From positions 310,001 to 374,000 of the forward strand of contig NIVC01000620.1 of NCBI GenBank assembly GCA_002269645.1: a DNA stretch of 64,000 nucleotides, read 5' to 3'. Position numbers and translations under genes: made by a program. This stretch comes from Macrostomum lignano. Lineage: Eukaryota. The notes beneath the pieces are model-generated. The model did not search any database and was not told the origin of the DNA. It saw only the letters and a program-made list of their open reading frames with translations. This document shows positions 1-63,515 of the stretch, one piece after another. Positions within the stretch are counted from its first letter, which is position 1; each line of letters starts with the position of its first letter.

Positions 1-589
1 TATCTATCTATGTGATCGATTAGAGAAAAAATGGCTGGACCGATTTTGTTCGAACTTGCACTATTCGATCAGAAATTTTCTCGTGACTGTACATGCATCG
101 TGGCTAAGAAATTGCTCGATGCTAAAGGCATTAAATATTCAAAAAACATGCTTTTTTGCAAAGGTCAAGCAAACTTTTCGACTTGAAATGCATTGTAAGA
201 ATGCTAGCAGAAAAACTGACTGGTTGAATTCTGATTCTGAAATAGATTGCATCATAACTGAATTGTAACTCCGACTTGAATTGAAAATGCAGTGTGGAAG
301 CGTAGCACCAGACTTGATTTAAATTGCGTAACCATATTGTTAACTGATACTGACTGACTGAGAAACTGATTATGTCATAACTGCTTTGTGTGATTTACTC
401 TATGCTTGGATTTTCAAGTGTTGAATTATATAAGTGCAAAATTTGATGTTATCAAAACGATGAGAGCTAGCCTAGAGGTGAACAAACTGAACTGCTAAAT
501 GCAGCGACGATGGTTCGAATTTTCATAGAGTATAATTTTTTTAATTAAAGCTTTTCAACGTCAGGAAAACTAAAAGACTTTTTAAAAAG

Positions 590-2110: not shown

Positions 2111-2992
2111 ATTAAGAAGCATCATGGTAGAATAAAAGAAGCATCATGTCAGACATGAAGGGTGTCATGTAAAAATTAAATGCAGCTATAATGCTGTGCT
2201 GGGGAGAAAAACTGAGACATCAAGGCTCTCAGAGAATAACTGAGATTACGGGGGGGTTTCTGTGATGTCAAAGCAAAAGTCAGAAGCTACTTCAAAGTTC
2301 ATGTACTTTACTCAATTTTTTTATTGTATTCTTTGTTGGCTCGCCACTAGGGGGGCGCTGATAGAAGAAGAGTCATGTAAAAAATAAAAGTAGCACTACG
2401 TATACATAAAAGAAAAGTCATGTCGAAGTTAAAAGATTCATTTGGGAATTGCTACGAGGTCAAAGCTTGGTGGAAATCGTTATAGTGCTGTGATTCTTAA
2501 AGAAGGAATCACTAAAATGACAAGGCTTAGGGGAGAAGAATTGCTGAGATTTCAAGGCTTTAGGTTGGGTTAAAGTTAGGTTTAGGTCAGGTGTGGGTTG
2601 AAGGTTAGATTTTATCGGGTTTCAAGGTTAACAGAATAACAGGGGATTTTTTAGATTTCAAGGTTTATGGGGGCCATTGCTGATATGTTAAGGCTTACGG
2701 GGGGAATAGCTGAGATGTCAAGGCTCACGGGGGTATAAATGAGATTTCAAGGCTAAAGTCAGAAGCTACATGTAGTTTATTGAAAACTTTTTATTACATT
2801 ATTTGATGCCTCCTCAGGGGAGGGATCGCTGATAAAAAAAAGCATAATGTAAAAAATAAAAGAAGCTTCATGTCGAAGTTAAGAGATTCATTTGGGAATC
2901 CCTACGATGTCGAGGCTTGCAGGGAATCGCTATAATGCTGTAGTAGTGCTATAATGACTCTTAGAGAGAATTATTACTGAAATTTCAATGCT

Positions 2993-7531: not shown

Positions 7532-7659
7532 GTTGGTTTGTGATGTTTTAACTCGATACGTTTATTCATTGTATATCTGTGTTCATTGTCACTTTTTTTA
7601 ACTGAAATTGTTTTGATGCTTCTCTATTCTTACTTCCTTTATCTCACGCCTGCCCTCAT

Positions 7660-9130
7660 TTCACCCCTGTCCTCTCCACCCTCTTTTTCTCTCCCCTCCT
7701 TTCTCCCATCTCCTCTCCCCTTCTTTCTCCCCTCTCCTTTCTCCCATCTCCTCTCCCCTCTCCTTTATCCCCTCTCCTTTCTCCCCTCCTTTCTCCCCTC
7801 TCTTCTCCCCTCTCCTTTCTCCCCTCTCCTTTCTCCCATCTCCTTTCTCCCCTCCTTTCTCCCCTCTCTTCTCCCCTCTCCTTTCTCCCCTCTCCTTTCT
7901 CCCATCTCCTTTCTCCCCTCCTTTCTCCCCTCTCTTCTCCCCTCTCCTTTCTCCCATCTCCTCTCCCCCCTCCTTTCTCCCCTCTCCTTTCTCCCATCTC
8001 CTCTCCCCTCTCCTTTCTCCCCTCTTCTTTCTCCTCCTTTCTCCCCTCTCCTTTCTCCCATCTCCTCTCCCCTCCTTTCTCCCCTCTTCTTTCTCCCCTC
8101 CTTTCTCCCCTCTCTTCTCCCCTCTCCTTTCTCCCATCTCCTCTCCCCTCTCCTTTCTCCCCTCCTTTCTCCCCTCTCTTCTCCCCTCTCCTTTCTCCCA
8201 TCTCCTCTCCCCCCTCCTTTCTCCCCTCTCCTTTCTCCCATCTCCTCTCCCCTCTCCTTTCTCCCCTCTCCTTTCTCCCCTCTCCTTTCTCCCATCTCCT
8301 CTCCCCTCCTTTCTCCCCTCTCTTCTCCCCTCTCCTTTCTCCCCTCCTTTCTCCCCTCTCTTCTCCCCTCTCCTTTCTCCCCTCTCCTTTCTCCCCTCTC
8401 CTTTCTCCCCTCTCCTTTCTCCCCTCTCCTTTCTCCCCTCTCTTCTCCCCTCTCCTTTCTCCCATCTCCTCTCCCCCCTCCTTTCTCCCCTCTCCTTTCT
8501 CCCATCTCCTTTCTCCCATCTCCTCTCCCCTCCTTTCTCCCCTCTCTTCTCCCCTCTCCTTTCTCCCATCTCCTCTCCCCCCTCCTTTCTCCCCTCTCCT
8601 TTCTCCCATCTCCTTTCTCCCATCTCCTCTCCCCTCCTTTCTCCCCTCTCTTCTCCCCTCTCCTTTCTCCCATCTCCTCTCCCCCCTCCTTTCTCCCTTC
8701 TCCTTTCTCCCATCTCCTCTCCCCTCTCCTTTCTCCCCACTCCTTTCTCCCATCTCCTCTCCCCTTTCCTTTCTCCCCTCTTCTTTCTCCTCCTTTCTCC
8801 CCTCTCCTTTCTCCCCTCTCCTTTCTCCCCTCTTCTTTCTCCTCCTTTCTCCCCTCTCCTTTCTCCCATCTCCTCTCCCCTCCTTTCTCCCCTCTCCTTT
8901 CTCCCATCTCCTCTCCCCTCCTTTCTCCCCTCTCCTTTCTCCCATCTCCTCTCCCCTCCTTTCTCCCCTCTCCTTTCTCCCATCTCCTCTCCCCTCCTTT
9001 CTCCCCTCTCCTTTCTCCCATCTCCTCTCCCCTCCTTTCTCCCCTCTCCTTTCTCCCCTCTCCTTTCTCCCATCTCCTCTCCCCTCCTTTCTCCCCTCTG
9101 TTTTCTCCCCTCTCCGTTCTTCCCTCTCTT
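7660..9130. repeat. Polypyrimidine minisatellite
   Basis: TCTCCTTTCTCCCC variants, almost purely C/T. Confidence 0.93.
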
Positions 9131-10508
9131 CCTGTCTCACTCCTTTCTCCCCTCATTTCTCTTCTCTCCTCTCTCTTTCATTTCTCCCCTCACATCTGTC
9201 CTCTCTCCTTTCCCTCATCTCTTCTCCCCCTCTCTTTTCTACTCTGCTCCATTTTCTCCTCTCCCTCGTTTCCTCTTCTCTCTTTCCTTTCTACTTGCCT
9301 TCTTGTCTCTTGTTTCTCCTCTCTTCCTGTTTCTCATCTCTCCTTTTTATCGCTTTCTTATCTCTACTTTACTTTCAGTTTTTTTACGTTATTGTAATCT
9401 TCCCTCCGCCTGTAATCTCATAACTCATCACTCTCATCTTGAAGGCAATTCCAATCCAATCTACGAAAAATATCGAGTCGAAAATGTACGAGGATTAATG
9501 CAGATTGACAGTTGATATGAAGTTGAGCTTAAGCACGCCATAATGCCATTTGATAATTAATCCCTAGCTGCTGCGGATCATGTGCATTTGGCTCTGTAAT
9601 TAGAGCCTATTGTTATGAGACTATTCCATACAGACAATGCCAGCCTGAATTAAATGGCATTGGATACTGAAGTAGATTGATTTTTTTCTGTTATCCATCT
9701 GCCTTTCTTGTCGTCTTTCGTTTCTCTAAAGTCGTACGAGTATCTGTCCATGGATTCTTAGTAGCATTCTCTGGACTCTGAGCAGGAAAAGCCAGAAACT
9801 CCTAGATTAAAAACTCTGGACTGGAAACGGTGAACAGGGAAGTCAGGGATTCCTAGTTAGAACTCTGGACTGGAAGCGAACAGGGAAATCCAGGGACTCC
9901 TAGCTGGAGCTCTGAACTAGAAATGGCAAGCAGGGAAAACCAGGGACTCCCATCTGAAGCTCTGGACTGGAAACGTCAAATAGGGAAAACCAGGGACTCC
10001 TAGTTGGAACTCTGAACTGAAAACAAACAGAAAATGCCAGGGACTCCTAGAAGTCTCTAGATTGGAAAGTATGTAAGAAAGACAGAGACTTCAAAAGAAT
10101 CGATGATGCTTTTGTGTATTATATTACATGTTTATGGCTTCTTGCTGGCTCTGACTTACTAATAATGTACCCTTAGTAACTAAATGGGCGTTGTCTGTTA
10201 TTCTATTGATTTTGTCAAACTCTTTTCCTCTGCATTAAGATAGGACAGTAGCTAGGGTCTGTGCTCTGTACTCCCTACGCCCTATGAATCTATAGTCAGT
10301 CTATAGTCACCTCTGTTTTTTTCTAAAAAAGTTCTTTATTACAACCAACCAAATTCCACGTTGAATGGAAGTTTCCATCGCTCCAGCTCTGTACTGTCTT
10401 CACCTGCCTCTCTTCCCCGTTGCACATGTCCATCATGTGAATTTTCTTCCTGTCCCTTTTTCTACCTGTCCAAACTGTCTGCACTGCTGTTACCTATGTC
10501 TGGAATGG

Positions 10509-11184: not shown

Positions 11185-13550
11185 CATCATCCCAGATCCT
11201 CGGTTGCTGGGCCAGCCTCCCCGATCATCAGTTGCTGGGCCAGTCTCCCGATCATCAGTTGCTAGGCCACCAGTCTCCCAGATCCTCAGTTGCTGGGCCA
11301 CCAGCCTCCCAAATGCTCAGTTGCTGGGCCACCAGCCTCCCAGATTCTCAGTTGCTGGGCCACCAGCCTCCCAGATTCTCAGTTGCTGGGCCACCAGCCT
11401 CCCAGATTCTCAGTTGCTGGGCCACCAGCCTCCCAGATCCTCAGTTGCTGGGCCAGTCTCCCCGATCATCAGTTGCTGGGCCACCAGTCTCCCAGATCCT
11501 CGGTTGCTGGGCCACCAGCCTCCCAGATCCTCAGTTGCTGGGCCAGCCTCCCAAATCCTCAGTTGCTGGGCCACCAGCCTCCCAGATTCTCAGTTGCTGG
11601 GCCACCAGCCTCCCAGATCCTCAGTTGCTGGGCCACCAGCCTCCCAGATCCTCAGTTGATGGGCCACCAGCCTCCCAGATCCTCGGTTGCTGGGCCAGCC
11701 TCCCAGATCATCAGTTGCTGGGCCACCAGCCTCCCAGATCCTCAGTTGCTGGGCCACCAGCCTCCCAGATTCTCAGTTGCTGGGCCAGCCTCCCAAATCC
11801 TCAGTTGCTGGGCCACCAGCCTCCCAGATTCTCAGTTGCTGGGCCAGCCTCCCAAATCCTCAGTTGCTGGGCCACCAGCCTCCCAGATTCTCAGTTGCTG
11901 GGCCAGCCTCCCAAATCCTCAGTTGCTGGGCCACCAGCCTCCCAGATTCTCAGTTGCTGGGCCACCAGCCTCCCAGATCCTCAGTTGCTGGGCCACCAGC
12001 CTCCCAGATCCTCAGTTGATGGGCCACCAGCCTCCCAGATCCTCGGTTGCTGGGCCAGCCTCCCAGATCCTCAGTTGCTGGGCCACCAGCCTCCCAGATC
12101 CTCAGTTGCTGGGCCACCAGCCTCCCAGATCCTCAGTTGCTGGACCAGCCTCTCAGATCCTCAGTTGATGGGCCAGCCTCCCAGATCCTCAGTTGCTGGG
12201 CCACCAGCCTCCCAGATTCTCAGTTGCTGGGCCACCAGCCTCCCAGATCCTCAGTTGCTGGGCCACCAGCCTCCCAGATTCTCAGTTGCTGGGCCACCAG
12301 CCTCCCAGATCCTCGGTTGCTGGGCCAGCCTCCCCGATCATCAGTTGCTGGGCCAGTCTCCCGATCATCAGTTGCTAGGCCACCAGTCTCCCAGATCCTC
12401 AGTTGCTGGGCCACCAGCCTCCCAAATGCTCAGTTGCTGGGCCACCAGCCTCCCAGATTCTCAGTTGCTGGGCCACCAGCCTCCCAGATTCTCAGTTGCT
12501 GGGCCACCAGCCTCCCAGATTCTCAGTTGCTGGGCCACCAGCCTCCCAGATCCTCAGTTGCTGGGCCAGTCTCCCCGATCATCAGTTGCTGGGCCACCAG
12601 TCTCCCAGATCCTCGGTTGCTGGGCCACCAGCCTCCCAGATCCTCAGTTGCTGGGCCAGCCTCCCAAATCCTCAGTTGCTGGGCCACCAGCCTCCCAGAT
12701 TCTCAGTTGCTGGGCCACCAGCCTCCCAGATCCTCAGTTGCTGGGCCACCAGCCTCCCAGATCCTCAGTTGATGGGCCACCAGCCTCCCAGATCCTCGGT
12801 TGCTGGGCCAGCCTCCCAGATCATCAGTTGCTGGGCCACCAGCCTCCCAGATCCTCAGTTGCTGGGCCACCAGCCTCCCAGATTCTCAGTTGCTGGGCCA
12901 GCCTCCCAAATCCTCAGTTGCTGGGCCACCAGCCTCCCAGATTCTCAGTTGCTGGGCCAGCCTCCCAAATCCTCAGTTGCTGGGCCACCAGCCTCCCAGA
13001 TTCTCAGTTGCTGGGCCAGCCTCCCAAATCCTCAGTTGCTGGGCCACCAGCCTCCCAGATTCTCAGTTGCTGGGCCACCAGCCTCCCAGATCCTCAGTTG
13101 CTGGGCCACCAGCCTCCCAGATCCTCAGTTGATGGGCCACCAGCCTCCCAGATCCTCGGTTGCTGGGCCAGCCTCCCAGATCCTCAGTTGCTGGGCCACC
13201 AGCCTCCCAGATCCTCAGTTGCTGGGCCACCAGCCTCCCAGATCCTCAGTTGCTGGACCAGCCTCTCAGATCCTCAGTTGATGGGCCAGCCTCCCAGATC
13301 CTCAGTTGCTGGGCCACCAGCCTCCCAGATTCTCAGTTGCTGGGCCACCAGCCTCCCAGATCCTCAGTTGCTGGGCCACCAGCCTCCCAGATTCTCAGTT
13401 GCTGGGCCACCAGCCTCCCAGATCCTCAGTTGATGGGCCAGTCTCCCCGATCATCAGTTGCTGGGCCACCAGTCTCCCAGATCCTCGGTTGCTGGGCCAC
13501 CAGCCTCCCAGATCCTCAGTTGCTGGGCCAGCCTCCCAGATCCTCAGTTG
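11185..13550. repeat. Minisatellite, 31/27-bp unit with a 1113-bp higher-order duplication
   Basis: CTCCCAGATCCTCAGTTGCTGGGCCACCAGC; identical translated tracts offset by 1113 bp. Confidence 0.95.
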
Positions 13551-13759: not shown

Positions 13760-14249
13760 GTGAGTCGCTTTTGTCTATGGCAGTGAGCCAATATTGAGCA
13801 ACCATTTCGGATAGCAAAGATGCAGTTAAGAGAAGTAAGGGAAGATTTTTTTGATTCAGACGTCAATCAACTTCACTTCCTGTCTGCCTCCGGCTGATTT
13901 CCTATCACACTATCGAGCAGAGTTATAGAATCATTGCTAATTGCGCACTGGAACCACTTCATTCACCCTCTCTAACCCGCAAAAAATAAACTCGCATTTT
14001 AGCTGAAGAAAATTCACTTCCGTCACTGTATTATTATTGACTTCCTGCTTGCAGAGTTTTCTTGCCCAACTATTAATGTGTTGTGACCTGTGTCACAGTG
14101 CTCCCCTGGTGCAAGTGCACTTTGATAGTTGTTGACTTTGGTAGTTGATTATTGTTACCCCCCCCCCCCCCCCCGGCTCAAGCCAGTCTGGAGCTATGAG
14201 CCCTTTGGCTGAGCCTCTGCTCTCTTTCTCTCTCTCTCCCTTTGGCTAG

Positions 14250-14500
14250 CCGTGCTGATTGGCTGGGCCTCTGCTCTCTCTCCCTCTCCCTGGCCGTGCG
14301 CGCTTCCACCCTCCCCTCGCCGCAGCCAATCAGCTGTCAATCAGCTCCATTGTTTAAGCCCTTTCTCCCCCCCCTTGTTTGCGCCCCTGCCCCTTTTTAC
14401 TCGTTATTTAAGGCGACGCTCAGACCCCGCCCCTTTTCTCACCGTGCCTGCGCCCATTTGCGCCCACCGCGATAAATAAACGAACGTGACCAGCGATCAG
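14250..14500 (+). promoter_or_regulatory. LTR U3 core promoter elements
   Basis: Inverted CCAAT boxes (GCTGATTGGCT near 14254, AGCCAATCAGC near 14324); TATA-like/AATAAA GATAAATAAA at 14471-14480, about 28 nt upstream of an initiator-like TCAG immediately before the SL copy. Confidence 0.55.
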
Positions 14501-14542
14501 CCGTAAAGACGGTCTCTTACTGCGAAGACTCAATTTATTGCA
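14501..14542 (+). other. Spliced-leader (SL) sequence copy in the 5' LTR
   Basis: CCGTAAAGACGGTCTCTTACTGCGAAGACTCAATTTATTGCA matches 42 of 44 nt of the Macrostomum SL as recalled (…TTTATTGCATG). The terminal ATG is replaced (GCAATCG) and no GT donor follows. Confidence 0.85.
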
Positions 14543-14664
14543 ATCGATCGGCCTTCCCGTGTATGAGTGCTATAATCGACCCGGCCCGGTAAGCTGTCGA
14601 AACAATTGCCTGTGTTCCTCGGGGTCGCTCTCCTGATCTCTCTCTCTCTCACTCTCTCCTCAGT

Positions 14665-14865
14665 CTGACTCACCAGGCTGTCGAGTGGCCGACCGCCCGC
14701 AGCCCTCTCTCTCTTCCTTGACTCACCAGGCTGTCGAGTGGCCGCCCGCCCACAGCCCTCTCTCTTTTCCTTGATTCACCAGGCTGTCGAGTGGCCGACC
14801 GCCCGCAGCCCTCTCTCTCTTCCTTGACTCACCAGGCTGTCGAGTGGCCGCCCGCCCACAGCCGC
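14665..14865 (+). repeat. 53-bp tandem repeat x4 in the LTR (also about 22496-22695)
   Basis: TGACTCACCAGGCTGTCGAGTGGCC… units start at 14666, 14719, 14772 and 14825. Confidence 0.85.
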
Positions 14866-15032
14866 CCCTCCCCTCTCTCTCGACTTCTCAACCTTGACCT
14901 CCCCCCGAAGTGTCCGTACGCCTCGGGGTCGCCGATCGAGCTCGTAAGCCCTGGGCAGTCTAGTACCCGAACCCCGACACCGCTACCCGTCGCCCAACCC
15001 GGCCGTGCCAGCGAGGAAGGGGGATACAACAT

Positions 15033-15050
15033 TGGCGCCCGAACAGGGAC
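15033..15050 (+). other. Primer-binding site for tRNA-Lys(UUU)
   Basis: TGGCGCCCGAACAGGGAC starts 1 nt after the 5' LTR; the same 18-mer as the HIV-1 tRNA-Lys3 PBS. Confidence 0.93.
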
Positions 15051-15074
15051 TGCTCAGTTTGCTTGTGAGCTGTC

Positions 15075-16055
15075 ATGGCGAATGTGGACGAACTGATTCG
15101 GCTGCTAGCCGAGCGTCTGCGAGCGGATGGACCAGCCCAGCCACCGAGACTCCCGAAGCCCGTGAAGTACACGTCAAGCATGAATTTTCGACTCTGGCTG
15201 CGCTCTTTCAACGCTTATTGCGACTCCGCCGAGATTGACGAGGAGCATCGCCGCGAGCACTTGATGAGCATGCTGGATCTCGCTACGGCGTACGCTGCGG
15301 TCGATAATCTGAACCTGCCGGGACCCGACGATCCTGTGGATCCGCTGGACTACGAGGGATTCACCGCCCGGTTGGAGGCTCGCTTCTCCCGGTACCGGAC
15401 AGAGCAGGACAGCAAGGTCGAGCTAAAAACCCGAGATCAGAAGGATGGCGAGTCGTTGGAGGCCTACGCAGATGCTCTCCTTGAACTGGTGCGCTGTGCC
15501 TACCCGGCGGCAACTGCCGAGCTGCAGGACGACCTCGCGAAGGATCGCTTCATGCAAGGGGTGAGACTCTCCGACCTCCAGCGAGAGAAGCTCTACCTGC
15601 AGCAGCCCGAAGGTCTGGTGGCAGCACAACGCGCGGTGAGGCAGCTCGAGGCGGCGTCCAAGGCGGCGAAGGGACCGAGATCGGCTGGAGCAACTGGCAG
15701 CGGCCACCGAGGAGTCTTCGTGGTGAGCGGCGCGGCGGAATCTGTGCCTCGGGAGGATGGAGCCTACTCCCAAGAAAAGGACAAAGAGCTCGAGGAGTTG
15801 AAGAAACTGGTGAGGCAGCTTCAAGGCAAAGTGGTTCAGCTCGAGTCGCTGAGAGCGGAACCGCATAGCAGCGCCGCAGCTCGACCGACCGACTCCGACG
15901 AAGGCGACCATCAGAAGCCTCGACGAACGGGAGGAATTCGCTGCTTCTTCTGCAACAAGCCAGGGCACATCGCGACTAACTGCCCAACCCGTCAGCAACA
16001 GGGAAACGGCAAGGGGAACTTCCGCAGGGGCGAGGGAGTTCCGCCGAGACAGTAG
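15075..16055 (+). CDS. gag: Gag polyprotein (326 aa) with CCHC zinc knuckle
   Basis: ATG 24 nt after the PBS; C-X2-C-X4-H-X4-C motif CFFCNKPGHIATNC near the C-terminus. Confidence 0.93.
   Translation: MANVDELIRLLAERLRADGPAQPPRLPKPVKYTSSMNFRLWLRSFNAYCDSAEIDEEHRREHLMSMLDLATAYAAVDNLNLPGPDDPVDPLDYEGFTARLEARFSRYRTEQDSKVELKTRDQKDGESLEAYADALLELVRCAYPAATAELQDDLAKDRFMQGVRLSDLQREKLYLQQPEGLVAAQRAVRQLEAASKAAKGPRSAGATGSGHRGVFVVSGAAESVPREDGAYSQEKDKELEELKKLVRQLQGKVVQLESLRAEPHSSAAARPTDSDEGDHQKPRRTGGIRCFFCNKPGHIATNCPTRQQQGNGKGNFRRGEGVPPRQ
16001..16045 (+). promoter_or_regulatory. -1 programmed ribosomal frameshift signal
   Basis: G GGA AAC heptamer in correct gag phase (16001-16007), 7-nt spacer, 9-bp stem 16015-16023/16034-16042. 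The -1 frame is open from 15980 into the protease. Confidence 0.8.
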
Positions 16056-19000
16056 AGGCCCCAACCCGAGACGAAGATGCAGCCCCGGAGCGACGTGCAG
16101 CAGGATGTCCGGCGGACTGCTCAAGAGATAGAGATCAACCTGCAACAGCTTTTAATCCCGTGTCAATCTACGTGTCGGTAAAAATTGGCGAGATTGAGTT
16201 GCCGTGTCTGTTGGATTCGGGCTCGGTCATGTCGCTGGTGAACGAGAGGACCTGGCGGCAGTTGAGCAAGTCGGTTCGAGTTGAACTCAGCCCTTCGGAA
16301 ACCCACCTGATCTCAGCGAACGGAACTCCCATGAATGTGTTAGGATGCGCGTCGCTTCCCCTACAGTTCGGATCAGAAACTTTACAGACGCCAATTGCGG
16401 TGGTCCAAGGGGTCGGCTACGAACTGTTGCTAGGCACCGACTTCTTACGCCGCCACCGGTGCCAAATCGATTTCGCCGGAGGAGTTTTCCGCGTGAACGG
16501 TTCACGTGTGCCAATCCGAGAGACCAAGCACAAACCAGTCGTCTGCCGGTTGTACCTGAACGAAAACTTGATCATTCCGGCCAATCACGAACGGACCGTC
16601 TCAGCCAGGATTCGGAGAACAGCGACACAGAATTCCGGAGTGCTCGGCGTCGCCGAGCCAGACGAAAAACTGAAGAGCGATGAGAGACCAATGCTAGCCA
16701 GGAGCGTCTGCCTCATCCAGCAGGGCAACACCCTACCAGTTCACTTCGCGAATGTCACGGACTCCGAGCTGCGGCTGCGGAAGGGAGCTGTCATCGGCTG
16801 GTTTCGACCATCAGATCCGGCTCAAGAGGTTCTGGTAGCCAGCATCGAAGAGCAAGCGTCGGTTTTACGACCCAGCTGCGATCCATGGGACCCAGAGGCG
16901 GCACTGAACCAGCACGGCTCCAAGCAGCTCACGGGGGCAGACAAAGCGAGTTTCCTAAGATTGGTGAATCGATACGCAGATGTTTTCGCAGAGAGTACAG
17001 CGCGCCTCGGGACGACGGACATCGTGCAGCATGAAATTGAGACCACCGGAACAGCCGTAAAACAGCCTCCGCGACGGCTACCGCCACATTGGCGCGGCGA
17101 AGTCGACCGACAAATCGACGAGCTTTTGGCAACGAAGATGATTGAACCGACCCAATCGCCGTGGAGTTCGCCAGTGGTCTGTGTCCGTAAGAAGAATGGG
17201 GAACTGCGACTGTGTGTCGACTACAGAGAGTTGAATCAACGAACTGTCAAGGACGCCATAGCAATCCCGCGTGTCGATGACGCACTTGAAGCGCTCGGAG
17301 GTGCGGCTGTATTTTCGACGCTCGACCTTTGCTCCGGCTATTGGCAAGTTAAGGTCAAAAGGGAGGATCAAGAAAAGACTGCTTTTGTCATTCCGCATCG
17401 GGGCAATTCGCGTTCAAGGTGCTGCCCTTCGGATTGACCAATGCGCCGGCGACATTCACAAGGTTGATGAATATGGTACTACACGACCTTCTGTGGAAAA
17501 TGGCGCTCGTCTACATCGACGATATCATCATTTGGTCCCGAACTGTCAGCGAGCATCTAACGAATCTCGAGGCGGTATTCCAGCGCCTGCGCGCAGCCAA
17601 CTTGAGGCTAAAGCCATCTAAGTGCAGATTCCTGGCCGATGAGGTCAAATTCCTTGGCCACGTCGTGTCAAAGGACGGAATCGATGTCGACCCGGAGAAG
17701 ATCAAGGAAGTCCGTGACTGGAGCATTCCAAGAAATGCAAAAGACCTTCAGTCGTTCCTGGGTCTGGCTGGTTACTACCGAAACTTCATACCAGAATTCT
17801 CGATAGTCGCTGCACCACTTTTTGATCTGACAAAGAAAGACAAGCCGTTCAGTTGGAGAGAGGAACACGATGAGGCCTTCAAAAAGCTGAAAGAAGAATT
17901 GACCGGTTGCCGCGTGATGGCCTACCCGAACTTCGACCCCACGGCTGGTGAGTTCATCTTGGATACCGATGGAAGTACCCGACAGGGTCTCGGAGCAGTC
18001 TTGTCGCAGGTACAAGAAGACGGGTCAGAGCGGGTTATTGCGTACGGGAGTCGGCGTCTGCAAGGGGCCGAATTCAACTATTGCACGACACGAATCGAGC
18101 TCCTGGCGCTGGTGACATTCGCAGAGAGGTTCCGGTACTATCTACTTGGCCGGAGGTTCCGGGTGCGCACCGACCACGCAAGTCTGCAGTGGCTCCGAAG
18201 TATGAGGCAGCCGGAAGGCCAGTTGGCTCGGTGGATGGAGAGGTTGGCGCCATTCGACTTCGCAGTGGAGCATCGGCCAGGGGCGCGTCATCAGAATGCG
18301 GACGCGCTGTCACGCAAGCCGCGCGACGACATCCCGAAATGGATAACTGCCCGTCGTGCCGGACTGATGACCTCCCCGGGGTCAGGGTAACGACGCTGCT
18401 CGGGTTGCTCAGCCGAGATGAGCTGGCAGCAGCACAAGCTGTGGACAACGACATCGCTCCAGTTTACCAGTCGATGCACGCCGGCCGAGCAAACGAAGAG
18501 CCACCTCGGGGTGCGTCACCAACGACCCGAGCCATCTGGGCACAAAAGCCTCGGCTGGAAATTGTGGACAACACCCTCGTCATCAAGGATCTGGGACGTC
18601 ACCCACCGCGGGCTGTTCTCCCGAAGAAATTGATCCCCGACGCTCTGCAGACGCTGCACTCTGGACCAGGAGGTGGACACTTCGGCGTAGCAAAGACTCT
18701 GGAGAAAGTCAGGAACCGATTCTGGAGACCCGGCTTGAAGCGAGAGGTCGAGGAGTTTGTGCGAAGGTGTGACGACTGTAACCGGAGCAAGCCCGGGATG
18801 CGGCGGAAGGCCCCATTGGAGCCGATTCCCAGCAGCCATGTGTTTGAAAGAGTGATGGTGGATTTGATTGGACCACTGCCAACCAGCGTCCGAGGCAACA
18901 AATACATACTGACGATGCAGGACGCGTTCAGTAAGTGGCCAGTGGCAGTACCGGTGCCAGATCAGACGGCCAGCACCTGTGCAAGGGCAATGCTCGAGGA

Positions 19001-19976
19001 GTGGGTCTGTCACTACGGAGCCCCAGGAACAATCCACTCGGATCAGGGAGCCAATTTCGAGTCGCAATTGATCGGCCAGCTGTGCGAAAGTCTGAATATC
19101 CGAAAGACGCGTACGACCGCCTATCACCCCTCTGGAAACGGCCAAGTGGAAAGCTTCAATAAGACGCTGACTGCAGTGATCCGGGCGCACCTGGTGAAGG
19201 AGCCGGATCAGAGGCGGTGGGACGAATTCGTTGCCCCGGCGCTCATGGCGTATCGCTCCAGTGTGCACCGCGGCACCGGCTACTCACCCTTCTTCCTTCT
19301 GCATGGTCGCGAGATGTCTCTGCCAGTTGACTTGGGAGTGGCGCGCCCACTGGACATCGAACCGTACTGCGAGGAAGTCCAGAACCTGCGGGAGACGCTC
19401 GTGGAAGCCCATCGGGTGGTGCGTGAGAGAATAACGTCATATCAACGAGTGCAGAAAGACTGGTACGACCGGAAGGTGAAGGGTCGAGAATTCGTGGCTG
19501 GCGACGAGGTGTTCGTCTACAACCCCGTGTTGAAGGCCGGTGCCAAAGCGAAGCTCCACTCACCCTGGACCGGACCTGCCGTAGTTCTCGAGAAGCTGTC
19601 GGAGACGCGCTATAGGATTCGACAGGAAGGTCGACGGAAGCCGATCAAGGTGGTGCACTTTAACAACCTCCTGCCTCGGTACCGGAAGTACCCGGTCGAC
19701 GGCACCGGTGGCCCTCGGCGTCCTGCACCAAGGAGGTACCACCCAGGTCCTGCTCAAGAGACGGAATCCGTCAGGGAGGACTCGCAGGAATCGGACGATG
19801 AGGATGAGGAGCGATGGTGGCGACATTCCGGGCGGGTTCGAGAGGAGGGAGAACCAATGGATGTGCAGCAGCCAGGAGTGCAGCCGCAGCCGGAAGCGCC
19901 AGTTGAAGTCATCGAAGGTCGACCCCAGAGGGATCGAAGGGTTCCGCAGCGTTATGGAACGCCCGTTTATTATTAA
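16008..19976 (+). CDS. pol: Pol polyprotein (protease, RT, RNase H, integrase) with two single-base frameshifts
   Basis: LLDSGS protease; LDLCSGYWQ, LPFGL and YIDD in RT; DTDGS…GLGAVL, TDH and ADALSR in RNase H; HHCC, D-D-E and GPY/F-like WTGP in integrase. Frame breaks at a GGGG run (17400-17403) and a CCC run (about 18333-18335). Confidence 0.92.
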
Positions 19977-20026
19977 GAGCGGACGTGAGTGCGTGCGCAA
20001 TGTCGCGTCATCTCCTGCGTCATAAA

Positions 20027-20195
20027 TAATTGGTTCGAAGCATCATCCGCGTCATCACCTGCGTCATCAACATTTGGTTCGAAGCATCATCCGCGTCATC
20101 ACCTGCGTCATCAACATTTGGTTCGAAGCATCATCCGCGTCATCACCTGCGTCATCAACATTTGGTTCGAAGCATCGTCTGCGTCATCACCCGCG
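20027..20195 (+). repeat. 44-bp tandem repeat (about 3.8 units) between pol and ORF3
   Basis: CATTTGGTTCGAAGCATCATCCGCGTCATCACCTGCGTCATCAA at 20071, 20115 and 20159. Confidence 0.85.
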
Positions 20196-20397
20196 TTATT
20201 GAAAACTGGGCTCGTGTTATTGCCTCTGCTTCACAAACAAAAATATATATTTCCCCTCTTAAGGCCCGTCAGTGGAGGTCCCACCTGCCCAACCCTGCCA
20301 TCAGGGATGAAGGATCGGCGCCCCAAAGAGGCTCGAAGGAACCATTGCCCTGCTCTCAAAAGTGAGTCGTGGTTGTTGCAGGCACTGCTTTCCGGGC

Positions 20398-21279
20398 ATG
20401 GACCTCTACGCCGAGTTTGGTGTCAGCCCCTTCGCGACGGAGGAGGAGCTGCGACGTGCGTACCGCCGTGAGAGCCTGCGACGGCACCCCGACAAGTGTG
20501 GACCCGGTGGAACGGAGAATTTCCAGAGGCTGCAGCATGCGAGTGCGGTCCTGCTGTGTCCGTTTCGACGAGCGCTGTACGACCGGTTCGGGCAGGATGC
20601 CGTTAGCAACCCGCTCGAGTGCGCCCGGTATTTTGTCCCGCCGGATGGGATGTGCGTCCCGGAGGAGTTTGTCGTAACGATTGAAGACGAAACAGAAGAG
20701 TCAGACGAGGACAGGGAGTCGGAAGGAAGCGAGCGTGGTGGTTGCGGCGGCGAGGAGACTGCTCAGAGCTGCTGTGAAATCACGCAGTCAGAGGAAGAAG
20801 AGCTCTTGAATGAATCCGACGGCGAAACTTCGATGTCAGAAGACGAACCGGAGCTCGTCATCGACCAACGGGAGTCGCCAGCGTGGCTGATGAGGAGCGA
20901 GCCGAGTACCGAGGTGGAATACACCTGGAGCGGGGAGGCAACGCAGCGAAGAGCTCGAATCCGGTCGGAGCTTCGGCACGCTTTGTTGTCGGGGAGTCCA
21001 GCTGCGATGTTCCGGCTTTTGACTGAAATGGTGGGACTGTGCGGCAGCGAGCGGCTGGATCATCGACGCGAAATCGCCGAGCTTTTGGCTCAGACTGTCA
21101 AGTTCATTCTCCGTGACATCAGCGCCAAGTGTCGGGGTCATGCTCGGCGTGTCTGGCGGCGGCCTGCCTTCAAGCGAAGCACTCGGTTCGTCATGAGTGT
21201 TGCGATCCCTCAGTTTGAACTAATCGACGGAGGACGCGTGTTGGGGTTGTTGCGCCGGGCGGCGGAGGTGGCGGTCTAG
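20398..21279 (+). CDS. ORF3: J-domain (DnaJ/Hsp40-type, HPD) protein, 293 aa, carried inside the retrotransposon
   Basis: N-terminal 65 aa DLYAEFGV…ELRRAYRRESLRRHPDK…FQRLQHASAVL…RRALYDRFG follows the J-domain pattern (HPD at 20485-20493); then an acidic linker and a predicted helical C-terminal region. Lies between pol and the 3' LTR. Confidence 0.88.
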   Translation: MDLYAEFGVSPFATEEELRRAYRRESLRRHPDKCGPGGTENFQRLQHASAVLLCPFRRALYDRFGQDAVSNPLECARYFVPPDGMCVPEEFVVTIEDETEESDEDRESEGSERGGCGGEETAQSCCEITQSEEEELLNESDGETSMSEDEPELVIDQRESPAWLMRSEPSTEVEYTWSGEATQRRARIRSELRHALLSGSPAAMFRLLTEMVGLCGSERLDHRREIAELLAQTVKFILRDISAKCRGHARRVWRRPAFKRSTRFVMSVAIPQFELIDGGRVLGLLRRAAEVAV

Positions 21280-21409
21280 GGGGTTCTGGGGCAGGATGCC
21301 AGGGCGGGCAAGAGACCTTCACTCCTTCATTTCATCCCATCTCTCCTCTGATCGTCGTTGTGATCCCTCTGTTTGGCACTGGGAGCGGCCCCGAAGGAAG
21401 GGCGGGGAA

Positions 21410-21815
21410 CACTCTCGGCCATGCCCGGCGCTCTCGGTCGTTGCCCGGCATTCTCGGCCGCTGCCCGGCATTCTCGGCCGCTGTCCGGCACTCTCGGCCA
21501 TGCCCGGCGTTCTCGGTCGCTGCCCGGCATTCTCGGCCGCTGCCCGGCATTCTCGGCCGCTGTCCGGCACTCTCGGCCATGCCCGGCGTTCTCGGCCATG
21601 CCCGGCGTTCTCGGTCGCTGCCCGGCATTCTCGGCCGCTGTCCGGCATTCTCGGCCATGCCAGGCGTTCTCGGCCGCTGCCCGGCATTCTCGGTCGCTGT
21701 CCGGCATTCTCGGCCATGCCCGGCGTTTTCGGCCACAGTCCGGCATTCTCGGCCGTGCCCGGTGTTCTCGGCCTGTCCGACATCCTCGGCCCCTGTCCTG
21801 CGCTCTCGGCCGCTG
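21410..21815 (+). repeat. GC-rich 19-21-bp tandem array in the element's 3' UTR
   Basis: CCGGCATTCTCGGCCGCTGC / CCGGCGTTCTCGGCCATGC variants. Confidence 0.85.
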
Positions 21816-21906
21816 CCTGACACTCTTGGTCTCTTTCATTCAGTTTCATTTCATTACATTTTTTTTTCATTTTCATTCAGTCAAAGCGCGTCGTTTTCTT
21901 TTTTTT

Positions 21907-21917
21907 AGGGGGGAGGG
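21907..21917 (+). other. Polypurine tract
   Basis: AGGGGGGAGGG directly abuts the TG of the 3' LTR, preceded by a T run. Confidence 0.92.
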
Positions 21918-22861
21918 TGTTGTGACCTGTGTCACAGTGCTCCCCTGGTGCAAGTGCACTTTGATAGTTGTTGACTTTGGTAGTTGATTATTGTTACCCC
22001 CCCCCGGCTCAAGCCAGTCTGGAGCTATGAGCCCTTTGGCTGAGCCTCTGCTCTCTTTCTCTCTCTCTCCCTTTGGCTAGCCGTGCTGATTGGCTGGGCC
22101 TCTGCTCTCTCTCCCTCTCCCTGGCCGTGCGCGCTTCCACCCTCCCCTCGCCGCAGCCAATCAGCTGTCAATCAGCTCCATTGTTTAAGCCCTTTCTCCC
22201 CCCCCTTGTTTGCGCCCCTGCCCCTTTTTACTCGTTATTTAAGGCGACGCTCAGACCCCGCCCCTTTTCTCACCGTGCCTGCGCCCATTTGCGCCCACCG
22301 CGATAAATAAACGAACGTGACCAGCGATCAGCCGTAAAGACGGTCTCTTACTGCGAAGACTCAATTTATTGCAATCGATCGGCCTTCCCGTGTATGAGTG
22401 CTATAATCGACCCGGCCCGGTAAGCTGTCGAAACAATTGCCTGTGTTCCTCGGGTCGCTCTCCTGATCTCTCTCTCTCTCACTCTCTCCTCAGTCTGACT
22501 CACCAGGCTGTCGAGTGGCCGACCGCCCGCAGCCCTCTCTCTCTTCCTTGACTCACCAGGCTGTCGAGTGGCCGCCCGCCCACAGCCCTCTCTCTTTTCC
22601 TTGATTCACCAGGCTGTCGAGTGGCCGACCGCCCGCAGCCCTCTCTCTCTTCCTTGACTCACCAGGCTGTCGAGTGGCCGCCCGCCCACAGCCGCCCCTC
22701 CCCTCTCTCTCGACTTCTCAACCTTGACCTCCCCCCGAAGTGTCCGTACGCCTCGGGGTCGCCGATCGAGCTCGTAAGCCCTGGGCAGTCTAGTACCCGA
22801 ACCCCGACACCGCTACCCGTCGCCCAACCCGGCCGTGCCAGCGAGGAAGGGGGATACAACA
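21918..22861 (+). repeat. 3' LTR (944 bp)
   Basis: Preceded by a polypurine tract, followed by the AATG TSD; near-identical to the 5' LTR. Confidence 0.97.
22332..22373 (+). other. Spliced-leader (SL) sequence copy in the 3' LTR
   Basis: Identical 42-mer at the same offset within the LTR. Confidence 0.85.
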
Positions 22862-23089
22862 AATGCATGAAAACTGATTCTATTCTATTTCGTGCAACTT
22901 TTAGCTGCTGAGGAGACTTGAGAATGCTCAAAAAACTGTTTAAATCAAAATCTTAGCTCAGGTAGGCTGCTGAGATTTTTAGGCTGATTGTCGTGAAGTA
23001 ACTTCTAGACACTTTGATTGTGGACGGGAGATCCGGTTTTAAGAAACTTGCAACACTAAATAATAAACTCGAACAACGTAAATATAAAA

Positions 23090-23760
23090 CTCGGACACCT
23101 TAAACTCGGACACCTTAAACTCGGACACCTTAAACTCGGACACCTTAAACTTGGACACCTTAAAACTCAGAAATCCCAAATTATACCTGGACACCTTAAA
23201 TAACACTCGGACACCTTAAATAACATTCGGACACCTTAAATAAAACTCGGACACCTTAAATAAACTCGGACACCCTATATAACACTCGGACACCCTATAT
23301 AACACTCGGACACCCTAAATAACACTCAGACACCCTAAATAGCACTCGGATACCGTATCTAACATTCGGACAACCTAAATAACACTCGGACACCCTAAGT
23401 AACACTCGGACAACCTAAATAACACTCGGACACCCTAAATAACACTTGTACACCCTAAATAACACTCGGACACCCTAAGTAACACTCGGACACCCTAAGT
23501 AACACTCGGACAACCTAAATAACACTCGGACACCCTAAATAACACTTGTACACCCTAAATAACACTCGGACACCCTAAGTAACACTCGGACACGCTAAAT
23601 GACACTCGGACACCCTAAATAATACTCGGACACCCTAAATAACACTCGGGCACCGTAACTAACATTCGGACATCCTAACTAATACTCGGACACCCTAAAT
23701 AACACTCGGACACCGTAACTAACATTCGGAAATCCTAACTAATACTCGGACACCCTAAAC
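23090..23760. repeat. Minisatellite, 20-bp unit
   Basis: ACTCGGACACCCTAAATAAC. Confidence 0.92.
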
Positions 23761-24975: not shown

Positions 24976-25614
24976 TCCCACTATTTACACATTGTCTTCT
25001 GTATGTCTTTTTGACTCCTACGAGCTATTTCAATAAAAAAATAAGACAAATCTATACTCACTGCCTTTACTCTTGACTAGTATAAATATTAGCTGTCTGT
25101 GTTAAGTAAAGGAAACTTTAAGTAATGTTAATTTTACATTGCATGTATTGCCATTCTATTGCGTATATATGCACAGAACTATGCTTATTTCCGTGCGTCT
25201 GTAAGCAACTACCGCAGCCACACCCAAGTATGCGCATGCATTCATGAATCCATTGTGCAAAAAATTGTTCTGAAATCTATTTTTAGCATCAACAATTAGT
25301 CAGTCTGGTCTTACTGCCATAATCAGGCATGGATGAAAGTAACGCTATAAAATGGAATCTAGCTTAGTTGTGGGTGTACTTTTTTACACCTGGAATTTGT
25401 CGTAGATGGTATAGGTCTTTCCCCTAAAGACAGGCAGACAGTCCGTGTTCATGCGATCATGGCTATCTAGATATGTAGAATTCTTTATTATTTGAAAAAG
25501 GGATTTTTTAGAATGTGGACATTTTGGACGTTTGTACTTATAGTAGTACTCTGTGTGTAACTTGAGCTTAAAAAAGCTTAAAAATTTCTTTCTTAAGCAC
25601 CAACCCATACAATA

Positions 25615-26410
25615 ACCCCACACTCCAACTAATACAATGATCCCACACTCTAACCTATACAATGATCCCACACTCCAACCTATACAATGATCCCACACTC
25701 CAACCTATACAATGATCCCACACTCTAACCTATACAATGATCCCACACTCCAACCTATACAATGATCCCACACTCCAACCCATACAATGATCCCATACTC
25801 CAACCTATACAATGATCCCACACTCCAACCTATACAATGATCCCACACTCCAACCTATACAATGATCCCACACCCCAACTCATACAATGATCCCACACTC
25901 CAACCTATACAATGATCCCACACTCCAACCTATACAATGATCCCACACTCCAACCTATACAATGATCCCACACTCCAACCTATACAATGATCCCACACCC
26001 CAACTCATACAATGATCCCACACTCCAACCTATACAATGATCCCACACTCCAACTCATACAATGATCCCACACTCCAACCCATACAATAACCCCACACCC
26101 CAACCTATACAATGATCCCACACTCCAACCTATACAATGATCCCACACTCCAACTCATACAATGATCCCACACTCCAACCTATACAATGATCCCACACTC
26201 CAACTCATACAATGATCCCACACTCCAACCTATACAATGATCCCACACCCCAACTCATACAATGATCCCACACTCCAACCTATACAATGATCCCACACTC
26301 CAACCTATACAATGATCCCACACCCCAACTCATACAATGATCCCACAGTCATCCCAATCCATACAATGATCCCACACAGCCATCGTATCCCATACAACGA
26401 TCCCACACCC
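25615..26410. repeat. Intronic minisatellite, 25-bp unit
   Basis: ATACAATGATCCCACACTCCAACCT; runs into the acceptor at 26423. Confidence 0.95.

Positions 26411-56088: not shown

Positions 56089-63515
<7,427 letters not shown>

What the first reader, a model, noticed from the sequence alone, without database searches (positions are those of the whole stretch)
14461..14545. LTR retrotransposon hard-wires the host trans-splicing spliced leader at its predicted transcription start
Seen: both LTRs contain CCGTAAAGACGGTCTCTTACTGCGAAGACTCAATTTATTGCA (14501-14542; 22332-22373), placed about 30 nt downstream of a TATA-like GATAAATAAA and right after an initiator-like TCAG. Known (from memory): this is the Macrostomum SL exon, and flatworm SLs end in a conserved AUG. 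Seen: that ATG is mutated (GCAATCG), and no GT donor or Sm site follows, so this is not an SL RNA gene. Inference: element transcripts would begin with a cis-encoded SL and mimic trans-spliced host mRNA. Possible benefits are SL-dependent translation, or camouflage from small-RNA silencing because targeting the SL would hit host mRNAs. Loss of the AUG avoids an extra upstream ORF. A plausible origin is strong-stop DNA copied from a trans-spliced RNA and fixed in R. I cannot establish whether this has been described before.
Basis: partly seen in the sequence, partly recalled or inferred. Interest (0 to 1): 0.95.

Follow-up and report, generated by a model that had tools for sequence, protein, structure and literature searches.

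The report
Host spliced-leader copy inside a retrotransposon LTR
A young Ty3/gypsy retrotransposon of the flatworm Macrostomum lignano carries a reverse-transcribed copy of the host's trans-splicing leader in both LTRs, but it probably lies about 65 nt inside the transcript, next to the poly(A) site, not at the transcription start.

Summary
The 42-mer occurs only at 14501-14542 and 22332-22373. It equals nt 1-42 of the published 44-nt M. lignano spliced leader (SL), and the final TG is replaced by AT. It lies in both LTRs of an 8.8-kb Ty3/gypsy element (14079-22861) and in the LTR of a second, independent copy on another M. lignano scaffold. Three related families lack it.

Compared with a real SL RNA gene, similarity covers the exon only. 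There is no SL-gene promoter, splice donor, intron or Sm site. This points to an RNA-derived insert.

The claim that the SL marks the transcription start is not established and is probably wrong:
- The "TATA-like" GATAAATAAA contains the LTR's only AATAAA.
- Related LTRs share the layout CCAAT, TATTTA box, A(A/G)TAAA, GTAAG donor, with conserved spacing.
- In that layout the SL is a clean 42-nt insertion just after the predicted poly(A) cleavage site, at the R/U5 border.

The best reading is a relic of reverse transcription of an SL-bearing RNA, carried as a passenger. The 5'-terminal "mimicry" reading keeps about 30% probability. Deciding needs 5'- and 3'-end mapping. I found no published description. 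Interest is moderate.

The parts
14079..15031 (+). 5' LTR (953 bp, TGTTG...CAACA termini)
21918..22861 (+). 3' LTR (944 bp). It is identical to the 5' LTR except for an 8-nt poly-C indel and a 1-nt indel.
14075..14078 (.). Target-site duplication AATG (second copy at 22862-22865)
14500..14542 (+). SL-exon copy in the 5' LTR: nt 1-42 of the 44-nt SL, plus the preceding G that also matches position -1 of a real SL gene
22331..22373 (+). SL-exon copy in the 3' LTR
14471..14480 (+). GATAAATAAA. It contains the LTR's only AATAAA (14475-14480), so it is the likely poly(A) signal, with predicted cleavage at CA 14498-14499. The 3' LTR copy is at 22302-22311.
14404..14428 (+). TTATTTAAGGCGACGCTCAGACCCC: a promoter-like block (TATTTA box) conserved in related families L001, L004 and L011, and the likely real TATA box. 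The 3' LTR copy is at 22235-22259.
14257..14333 (+). Two CCAAT-type boxes (GATTGGCTGG at 14257-14266, CCAATCAG at 14326-14333). The nearest box lies 71-91 nt upstream of the TATTTA box in all four families.
14588..14594 (+). GGTAAGC 5' splice-donor-like site. It is conserved 67-73 nt after the poly(A)-type hexamer in L004 and L011. In the window the distance is 114 nt, which is 72 + 42.
14666..14863 (+). 53-nt tandem repeats in the U5/leader part of the LTR. Copy number differs between element copies.
15033..15050 (+). Primer-binding site TGGCGCCCGAACAGGGAC. It has the same 18 nt as the HIV-1 PBS, which is complementary to tRNA-Lys3.
15075..16055 (+). gag (326 aa, CCHC zinc knuckle)
15980..19976 (+). 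pol (PR-RT-RNase H-IN) in three reading frames: 15980-17434, 17353-18387 and 17952-19973. As assembled there are frame breaks inside RT and between RNase H and IN.
20398..21279 (+). Third ORF with a DnaJ (J) domain. A splice acceptor TTGTTGCAG (20373-20381) lies just upstream.
21907..21917 (+). Polypurine tract AGGGGGGAGGG

Best explanation
Shown. The segment is a DNA copy of the host spliced-leader exon only: nt 1-42 of 44, or 43 nt counting the preceding G. It lies as a clean 42-nt insertion in the LTR of a young Ty3/gypsy family of Macrostomum lignano. It is present in both LTRs of this copy and in a second, independent insertion. It is absent from three related families.

Inferred origin. 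It is a retro-copied relic. During minus-strand strong-stop synthesis, a reverse transcriptase copied an SL-bearing RNA to its capped 5' end. The simplest source is the element's own leader RNA after SL trans-splicing at the CAG that now precedes the insert. A co-packaged SL-bearing RNA is the alternative. Synthesis then resumed on element template, which fixed the SL between R and U5. Normal replication then spread it to both LTRs and to new insertions.

Inferred position. TATTTAAGG (14405), preceded by CCAAT boxes, is the TATA box, and the TSS is near 14433-14441. AATAAA (14475) is the poly(A) signal, with cleavage near CA 14498-14499. The SL therefore begins at the R/U5 border, about 65 nt inside the 5' leader. 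At the 3' LTR it lies just past the cleavage site.

Inferred function. It is most likely a passenger. It lengthens the leader exon that ends at the GGTAAG donor, and it replaces the sequence just downstream of the poly(A) site. [quoted passage not shown]
For: Identity:
- The match to the published SL is exact over nt 1-42.
- Against a real SL RNA gene (L009), similarity is confined to 14500-14542. Identity is 28% and 27% in the 150-nt flanks, and the GTAAG donor, stem-loops and Sm-like site are all missing from the LTR.
- Trans-spliced mRNAs L005-L008 and L010 all read ...GCATG followed by exon sequence.

Propagation:
- The SL and the same junction are in both LTRs and in the 3' LTR of a second copy, L003 on NIVC01001446.1. 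That LTR differs by only 2 substitutions plus indels and has different flanking DNA.

Insertion, not ancestral:
- Related families L004 and L011 (M. lignano) and L001 lack it.
- The distance from the poly(A)-type hexamer to the GTAAG donor is 67 and 73 nt in L004 and L011. It is 114 nt here, which is 72 + 42.

Position:
- AATAAA 14475 is the only poly(A)-type hexamer in the LTR. The homologous block in L004 (AGTAAA) and L011 (AATAAA) carries the canonical-type poly(A) hexamer of those LTRs (L004 has an overlapping AATATA in the same block).
- The nearest CCAAT-type box lies 71-91 nt before the TATTTA box in all four families, including L001, which has no AATAAA block.

Precedents:
- RNA of the C. 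elegans Ty3/gypsy element Cer1 is SL1 trans-spliced (PMC3315495).
- LTR-retrotransposon reverse transcriptases make chimeric copies by template switching (PMC5131818, listed).
- SL relicts mark retro-copied genes in dinoflagellates (PMC6050394).
Against: - No transcript 5' or 3' ends could be examined. The U3/R/U5 borders are inferred from motifs only.
- GATAAATAAA followed by TCAG fits a TATA box and initiator with a start at 14499-14501.
- Retroviral LTRs with the poly(A) signal in U3 and a short R exist (Rous sarcoma virus, from memory).
- The CAG before the insert is a poor acceptor, with no pyrimidine tract. Its G may belong to the SL itself.
- The model needs a rare non-homologous or bulged-primer template switch and a further 2-nt loss (TG).
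- All three SL copies are identical and lack the ATG. This could reflect selection rather than youth.
Confidence: 0.55

Rival explanations
1. GATAAATAAA is the TATA box and transcription starts at A14499 or G14500. Every element RNA then begins with a cis-encoded SL and resembles a trans-spliced host mRNA, with possible effects on translation, stability or silencing. R would be the first ~10 nt of the SL, and the AATAAA would lie in U3.
For: - The A/T-rich motif lies 27-30 nt upstream of the SL, with TCAG immediately before it.
- The SL border is exactly nt 1 or -1 of the SL RNA.
- The ATG is absent.
- The SL-bearing LTR has retrotransposed at least twice.
- From memory: in Ascaris the SL sequence is itself an intragenic promoter element of the SL RNA gene (Hannon 1990). 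A promoter role has also been proposed for DinoSL relicts (PMC6050394). An inserted SL might therefore attract initiation at its own +1.
Against: - No poly(A)-type hexamer lies downstream of the SL in the LTR. R would be about 0-10 nt here, and also in L004 and L011 if their homologous block were the TATA box.
- The conserved CCAAT and TATTTA module lies 70-114 nt further upstream, and it is the only such module in L001.
- A Pol II mRNA would carry an m7G cap, not the TMG cap of real SL mRNAs (established knowledge).
- Protecting 42 nt from small RNAs does not protect an 8.8-kb element.
- Upstream-ATG depletion is not significant.
- Sister families do without the SL.
Confidence: 0.3
2. The insertion happened at the DNA level and is unrelated to the element's own RNA. 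A short SL cDNA fragment was captured into an LTR of a genomic copy, for example as filler at a repaired break. That copy then became the master element.
For: A 5-nt direct repeat, CGATC, flanks the insert together with AG and AT (AGCGATCAG[SL]ATCGATCGG). This could be a duplication or microhomology from an insertion event. The insert is nearly the complete free SL exon, 42-43 of 44-45 nt.
Against: - A 5-nt repeat in a short stretch is weak evidence.
- The location, within 1-2 nt of the predicted poly(A) cleavage site or TSS, would be a coincidence.
- Reverse transcription inside the particle is a more direct source of cDNA ends.
Confidence: 0.1
3. The segment is a variant or decayed SL RNA gene that happens to lie in the LTR, or an assembly chimera.
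For: The SL exon sequence is perfect over 42-43 nt.
Against: - Compared with the true gene L009 there is no SL-gene upstream sequence, no GT donor after the exon, no Sm site and no stem-loops. Rfam finds nothing.
- The same junctions are present in three LTRs on two scaffolds, so it is not a chimera.
Confidence: 0.03

Closest known systems
DinoSL relicts in dinoflagellate retrogenes (Slamovits & Keeling 2008, reviewed in PMC6050394)
   Same: A DNA-encoded copy of a spliced leader shows that an SL-bearing RNA was reverse transcribed and integrated. A promoter role for the relict has been discussed.
   Different: Those relicts lie upstream of host retrogenes. They are usually 5'-truncated and can be stacked. 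Here a nearly complete SL lies inside the LTR of an autonomous retrotransposon in an animal and is copied at every replication cycle.
SL-gene-specific non-LTR retrotransposons (SLACS, CZAR and CRE in trypanosomatids, NeSL-1 in C. elegans; partly from memory, SLACS mentioned in PMC4721609)
   Same: These are retroelements physically joined to SL sequence. For SLACS, transcripts are reported to start at +1 of the interrupted SL gene (from memory).
   Different: They are non-LTR elements that insert into SL RNA genes and use the gene's promoter. Here the SL exon was brought into the element, with no SL-gene promoter or intron, and it travels with the LTR.
Cassandra TRIM elements with 5S rRNA in the LTRs (Kalendar 2008, from memory); host-sequence capture by retroviral and LTR-retrotransposon template switching (PMC5131818)
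   Same: A host small-RNA or mRNA sequence is embedded in an LTR element through reverse-transcriptase template switching and is then propagated in both LTRs.
   Different: Cassandra carries a whole 5S gene with its Pol III promoter. Here only a 42-nt exon fragment is present, with no promoter of its own, and it sits at a processing landmark of the LTR.
SL1 trans-splicing of RNA of the C. elegans Ty3/gypsy element Cer1 (PMC3315495)
   Same: It shows that LTR-retrotransposon RNAs can receive an SL in trans. This is the first step of the proposed origin.
   Different: In Cer1 the SL is added after transcription to a subgenomic RNA and is not encoded in the element's DNA.

Membership tests
Ty3/gypsy (Metaviridae) LTR retrotransposon | Two near-identical LTRs with TG...CA termini, flanked by a short target-site duplication | tested here: met
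   LTRs at 14079-15031 and 21918-22861 have 945/945 aligned bases identical. Termini are TGTTG...CAACA. The duplication is AATG.
Ty3/gypsy (Metaviridae) LTR retrotransposon | PBS after the 5' LTR and polypurine tract before the 3' LTR | tested here: met
   TGGCGCCCGAACAGGGAC at 15033-15050 has the same 18 nt as the tRNA-Lys3 PBS of HIV-1. AGGGGGGAGGG is at 21907-21917.
Ty3/gypsy (Metaviridae) LTR retrotransposon | gag with CCHC knuckle; pol in the order PR-RT-RNase H-IN | tested here: met
   Pfam hits are zf-CCHC, aspartyl protease, RVT_1, RT_RNaseH, Integrase_H2C2 and rve, in that order. pol is split over three frames in this copy.
SL RNA gene | SL exon followed directly by a GT splice donor | tested here: not met
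   The LTR reads ...TTGCA|ATCGATCGG. The true gene L009 reads ...TTGCATG|GTAAGA.
SL RNA gene | Intron part with stem-loops and an Sm-binding site | tested here: not met
   There is no similarity to the L009 intron (27% identity in register) and no AUUUUUG-type site. There is no Rfam hit.
SL RNA gene | SL-gene upstream (promoter) sequence | tested here: not met
   Identity to the 150 nt upstream of the L009 gene is 28%. L009 may come from a different Macrostomum species, so this row is weaker than the two above.
SL relict from retro-copying of an SL-bearing RNA | Starts at the 5' end of the SL RNA, contains exon sequence only, and has no intron | tested here: met
   The match begins at nt 1 (or -1) and ends at nt 42 of 44.
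SL relict from retro-copying of an SL-bearing RNA | The SL is joined to sequence that follows an AG acceptor in the parental (SL-less) sequence | tested here: inconclusive
   CAG precedes the insert, and the flanks are retained relative to L004 and L011. The G may belong to the SL, and no SL-less member of the same family was found.
   No RNA-end data were reachable. No transcript contigs of this family are in the searched collections.
   The only poly(A)-type hexamer in the LTR (AATAAA 14475) lies upstream of the SL. None of 12 variants lies downstream.

The most novel reading that the evidence does not exclude
The SL copy defines the transcription start, through the adjacent A/T-rich motif or because the SL attracts initiation at its own +1. 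This retrotransposon family would then make m7G-capped RNAs that begin with the exact host SL. That would be a natural uncoupling of SL sequence from trans-splicing and from the TMG cap, possibly selected for translation, export or escape from surveillance.
Probability: 0.3. Interest if true: 0.85.

Novelty: new variant of a known kind. Interest (0 to 1): 0.55.

Why it matters
1. It is physical evidence, in an animal, that an SL-bearing RNA passed through an LTR retrotransposon's reverse-transcription cycle and remained replication-competent afterwards.

2. It matters for annotation. Pipelines that call trans-splice sites from SL-containing reads, or that search for SL RNA genes with the SL sequence, will be misled by DNA-encoded SL copies. 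One published M. lignano "SL RNA" was later shown to be a genomic SL joined to a protein-coding gene (PMC8629364). This may be a related case.

3. If the minority reading is right, it offers a natural test of what the SL sequence does without trans-splicing. M. lignano already has LTR-promoter reporter transgenesis (PMC12801592).

Tried and rejected
- Exact-protein look-ups of gag, the IN ORF and the DnaJ ORF found no further copies.
- The gag homologue search returned only relatives at 44-45% identity. The DnaJ-ORF search returned only generic Hsp40 J domains. The family could therefore be sampled only as 3 LTRs from 2 insertions.
- The viral-contig scan for the SL found nothing.
- The single metagenome scan gave one SL gene and five trans-spliced mRNAs, but no LTR-type junction.
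- Rfam on the LTR gave only chance-level hits.
- A global alignment of the LTR with L001 was uninformative, since only the PBS and short motif blocks align.
- L012 and L013 gave no usable RNA 3' ends.
- Upstream-ATG depletion in the 574-nt leader is not significant: 1 observed, 3.2 expected, P=0.13.
- Conservation of the SL between copies carries no information, because the two LTRs differ by only 2 substitutions overall.
- An SL-gene or pseudogene origin and an assembly artefact were both rejected.
- Literature searches found no description of an SL inside an LTR.

Full report
**Observation.** The 42-mer CCGTAAAGACGGTCTCTTACTGCGAAGACTCAATTTATTGCA occurs exactly twice in the window, at 14501-14542 and 22332-22373. 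There are no further hits at up to three mismatches and none in 100 shuffles. The surrounding sequence is as described: GATAAATAAA at 14471-14480, TCAG at 14497-14500, and GCAATCGATCGG after the SL.

**The element.**
- The two copies lie in the LTRs of an 8,783-bp element at 14079-22861. The LTRs are 14079-15031 and 21918-22861. All 945 aligned bases are identical. The only differences are an 8-nt poly-C indel and a 1-nt indel.
- The termini are TGTTG...CAACA and the target-site duplication is AATG.
- The primer-binding site TGGCGCCCGAACAGGGAC (15033-15050) has the same 18 nt as the tRNA-Lys3 PBS of HIV-1. The polypurine tract AGGGGGGAGGG is at 21907-21917.
- Pfam gives gag with a CCHC knuckle, then protease, RT, RNase H and integrase. 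This is the Ty3/gypsy order.
- As assembled, pol is spread over three frames, with breaks inside RT and between RNase H and IN. These could be real or assembly errors. I did not attempt any repair.
- A third ORF (20398-21279) carries a DnaJ J-domain.

**Is it the host SL?** Yes.
- The published 44-nt M. lignano consensus is CCGTAAAG...TTGCATG (PMC5173321). A 35-nt version is used in PMC8629364. The LTR matches nt 1-42 and then reads AT instead of TG.
- The host is M. lignano. The integrase ORF is 99% identical to BOX15_Mlig030754g1.
- A scan of metagenome contigs gave useful references. Five contigs begin with the SL and continue ...GCATG followed by coding sequence, so they are trans-spliced mRNAs.
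- A sixth contig, L009, holds a real SL RNA gene. The exon is followed by GTAAGA, then a stem-loop, AGTATTTTTAG (an Sm-like site) and a second stem-loop.
- Against that gene, the LTR is similar only over 14500-14542. Identity is 28% and 27% in the 150-nt flanks.
- The LTR therefore holds the exon alone, from the first transcribed nucleotide, with no promoter, donor, intron or Sm site. Rfam finds nothing. This is the signature of an RNA-derived copy.
- The G at 14500 is ambiguous. It matches position -1 of the L009 gene. It could be the true first SL nucleotide, a cap-templated extra G, or the G of an AG acceptor.

**Distribution.**
- A second copy of the family lies on another scaffold (L003, NIVC01001446.1). 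It is 5'-truncated and has different flanking DNA. Its 3' LTR has the identical SL and the identical ATCGATCGG junction.
- That LTR differs from the window's by two substitutions plus indels. The two copies are therefore young members of one subfamily. The SL-bearing LTR has retrotransposed at least twice.
- Two other M. lignano families of the same clade lack the SL. These are L004 (IN 47% identical) and L011 (gag 39% identical). An environmental relative, L001 (gag 43-44% identical, same PBS), also lacks it. All of them carry a DnaJ ORF.
- I could not reach more copies.

**Where in the LTR does it sit?** This is the crux.

The LTRs are too diverged to align globally, but they share an ordered set of motifs:

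| LTR | Nearest CCAAT-type box to TATTTA box | TATTTA box to poly(A)-type hexamer | Hexamer | Hexamer to GTAAG donor |
|---|---|---|---|---|
| Window | 79 nt | 70 nt | AATAAA | 114 nt (72 + 42) |
| L004 | 91 nt | 114 nt | AGTAAA | 67 nt |
| L011 | 83 nt | 82 nt | AATAAA | 73 nt |
| L001 | 71 nt | none | none | GTGAG donor 81 nt after the ATTTAA box |

- The extra 42 nt in the window is exactly the SL. The SL is therefore a clean insertion with both flanks retained.
The homologous blocks hold the only canonical-type hexamers in L004 and L011.
- An LTR element needs a poly(A) signal and an R region that lies between the TSS and the cleavage site.
- If this block is the poly(A) signal, cleavage falls near CA 14498-14499. 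The TSS must then lie upstream. The conserved CCAAT and TATTTAAGG module predicts it near 14433-14441, giving an R of about 60-65 nt. The same reading gives about 107 nt in L004 and about 77 nt in L011.
- The SL then begins at the R/U5 border, about 65 nt inside the RNA leader.
- If the block were both TATA box and poly(A) signal, R would shrink to about 0-10 nt in all three families. That is possible. Short-R layouts with the signal in U3 exist, for example in Rous sarcoma virus (from memory). It is less coherent, though.
- I put about 60% on the internal position and about 30% on the 5'-terminal position. No RNA-end data were available, so this remains inference.

**Origin (inferred).**
- The exact 5' border at the cap site shows that a reverse transcriptase ran off the 5' end of an SL-bearing RNA.
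- The simplest source is the element's own leader RNA, trans-spliced at the CAG that now precedes the insert. Cer1, a C. elegans Ty3/gypsy element, is known to be SL1 trans-spliced (PMC3315495).
- The strong-stop cDNA would then resume on a co-packaged unspliced RNA just upstream of the acceptor, or at the 3' end of R. This yields R-SL-U5 with no loss of flanking sequence.
- Template switching by LTR-retrotransposon reverse transcriptases is documented (PMC5131818).
- The expected ...GCATG|ATCG junction reads ...GCA|ATCG. This is a 2-nt loss that also removes the ATG.
- A flanking CGATC repeat allows an alternative, a DNA-level capture of the fragment.
- None of these steps can be tested on sequence alone.

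**Function.**
- On the preferred reading the SL is a passenger in the leader exon. That exon probably ends at the conserved GGTAAG donor. It probably splices to the acceptor immediately upstream of the DnaJ ORF: TTGTTGCAG at 20373-20381, with equivalent acceptors in L004 and L011.
- At the 3' LTR the SL lies just past the cleavage site.
A Pol II transcript would carry m7G, not TMG. Shielding 42 nt from small RNAs does not shield the element. Upstream-ATG depletion in the leader is not significant. Sister families do well without an SL.

**Novelty.**
- Full-text searches found no description of an SL inside an LTR.
- The 2025 survey of 137 M. lignano LTR-retrotransposon families does not mention spliced leader, trans-splicing or DnaJ (PMC12801592). 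The genome paper does not mention the feature either.
- The closest known cases are DinoSL relicts in dinoflagellate retrogenes, SL-gene-targeting non-LTR elements, and Cassandra LTRs with 5S rRNA (from memory).
- I rate it a new variant of a known kind, of moderate interest. It would be of high interest only if TSS mapping places the start at the SL.

Noticed in passing
window 20398-21279; L003 11597-12562; L004 12953-; L011 15450-; L001 5829-; L013 2249-2446: A clade of Ty3/gypsy elements carries a third ORF with a DnaJ J-domain (HPD motif) after pol. A splice acceptor lies 0-16 nt before its ATG in the three M. lignano families. The ORF is 99% conserved in L003 and 28% identical over 343 aa (E 2e-15) in L004. 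The J domain is also present in an environmental relative with only 43-44% gag identity. The word DnaJ does not occur in the text of the 2025 M. lignano LTR-retrotransposon survey, whose topic is heat-shock induction.
   Followed up: partly
window 17353-17437 and 18081-18390: pol changes reading frame twice, inside RT and between RNase H and IN, although the LTRs are identical. These are either recent disabling indels or assembly errors. I did not repair or resolve them.
   Followed up: partly
window 14666-14863 (and 22496-22693); L003 14044-14200: 53-nt tandem repeats lie in the U5/leader part of the LTR. One unit is missing in the L003 copy, and an 18-bp indel lies in U3. Indels, not substitutions, account for nearly all differences between copies.
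   Followed up: partly
L009 616-727 (metagenome contig Ga0302322_100095745): A complete SL RNA gene has an exon identical to the M. lignano SL and a G at position -1. It continues with a GTAAGA donor, two stem-loops and AGTATTTTTAG. Five SL-capped mRNA contigs come from another sample (Ga0316592). Macrostomum-like worms are therefore present in these environmental datasets. The true SL may be 45 nt and start with G.
   Followed up: partly
literature (PMC8629364): Ustyantsev and Berezikov report that the "SL RNA" of Wasik 2015 actually maps to the 5' end of a protein-coding gene (Mlig013257.g1, scaf577). That is another genome-encoded SL joined to a gene. It may be the same kind of retro-copied SL. 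I could not fetch that locus.
   Followed up: no
L011 8966-12312 and 12303-15652: A related M. lignano element contains a 3.35-kb internal tandem duplication (99.6% identical). It spans part of pol and the DnaJ ORF.
   Followed up: no
window 588-2126, 7655-9234, 11190-13550, 23189-23759, 25600-26377, 57308-59364 and many more: The window is packed with long minisatellite arrays, with periods of 14-60 nt and up to about 120 copies. One 2.4-kb array ends about 500 bp upstream of the element. Several long "ORFs" are only translated repeats.
   Followed up: no
window 45446-46591 (-) and 42140-42895 (+): Two likely host coding exons are present: a calcineurin-like metallophosphoesterase (Pfam E 1e-36) and a WSC-domain protein (E 2e-16).
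   Followed up: no
L001 822-839, L002 122-139 versus L004 7484- and L011 6854-: The tRNA-Lys3-type PBS is shared by the window family and the environmental relatives L001 and L002. The two other M. lignano families use different PBS sequences, so primer usage has switched within the clade.
   Followed up: no
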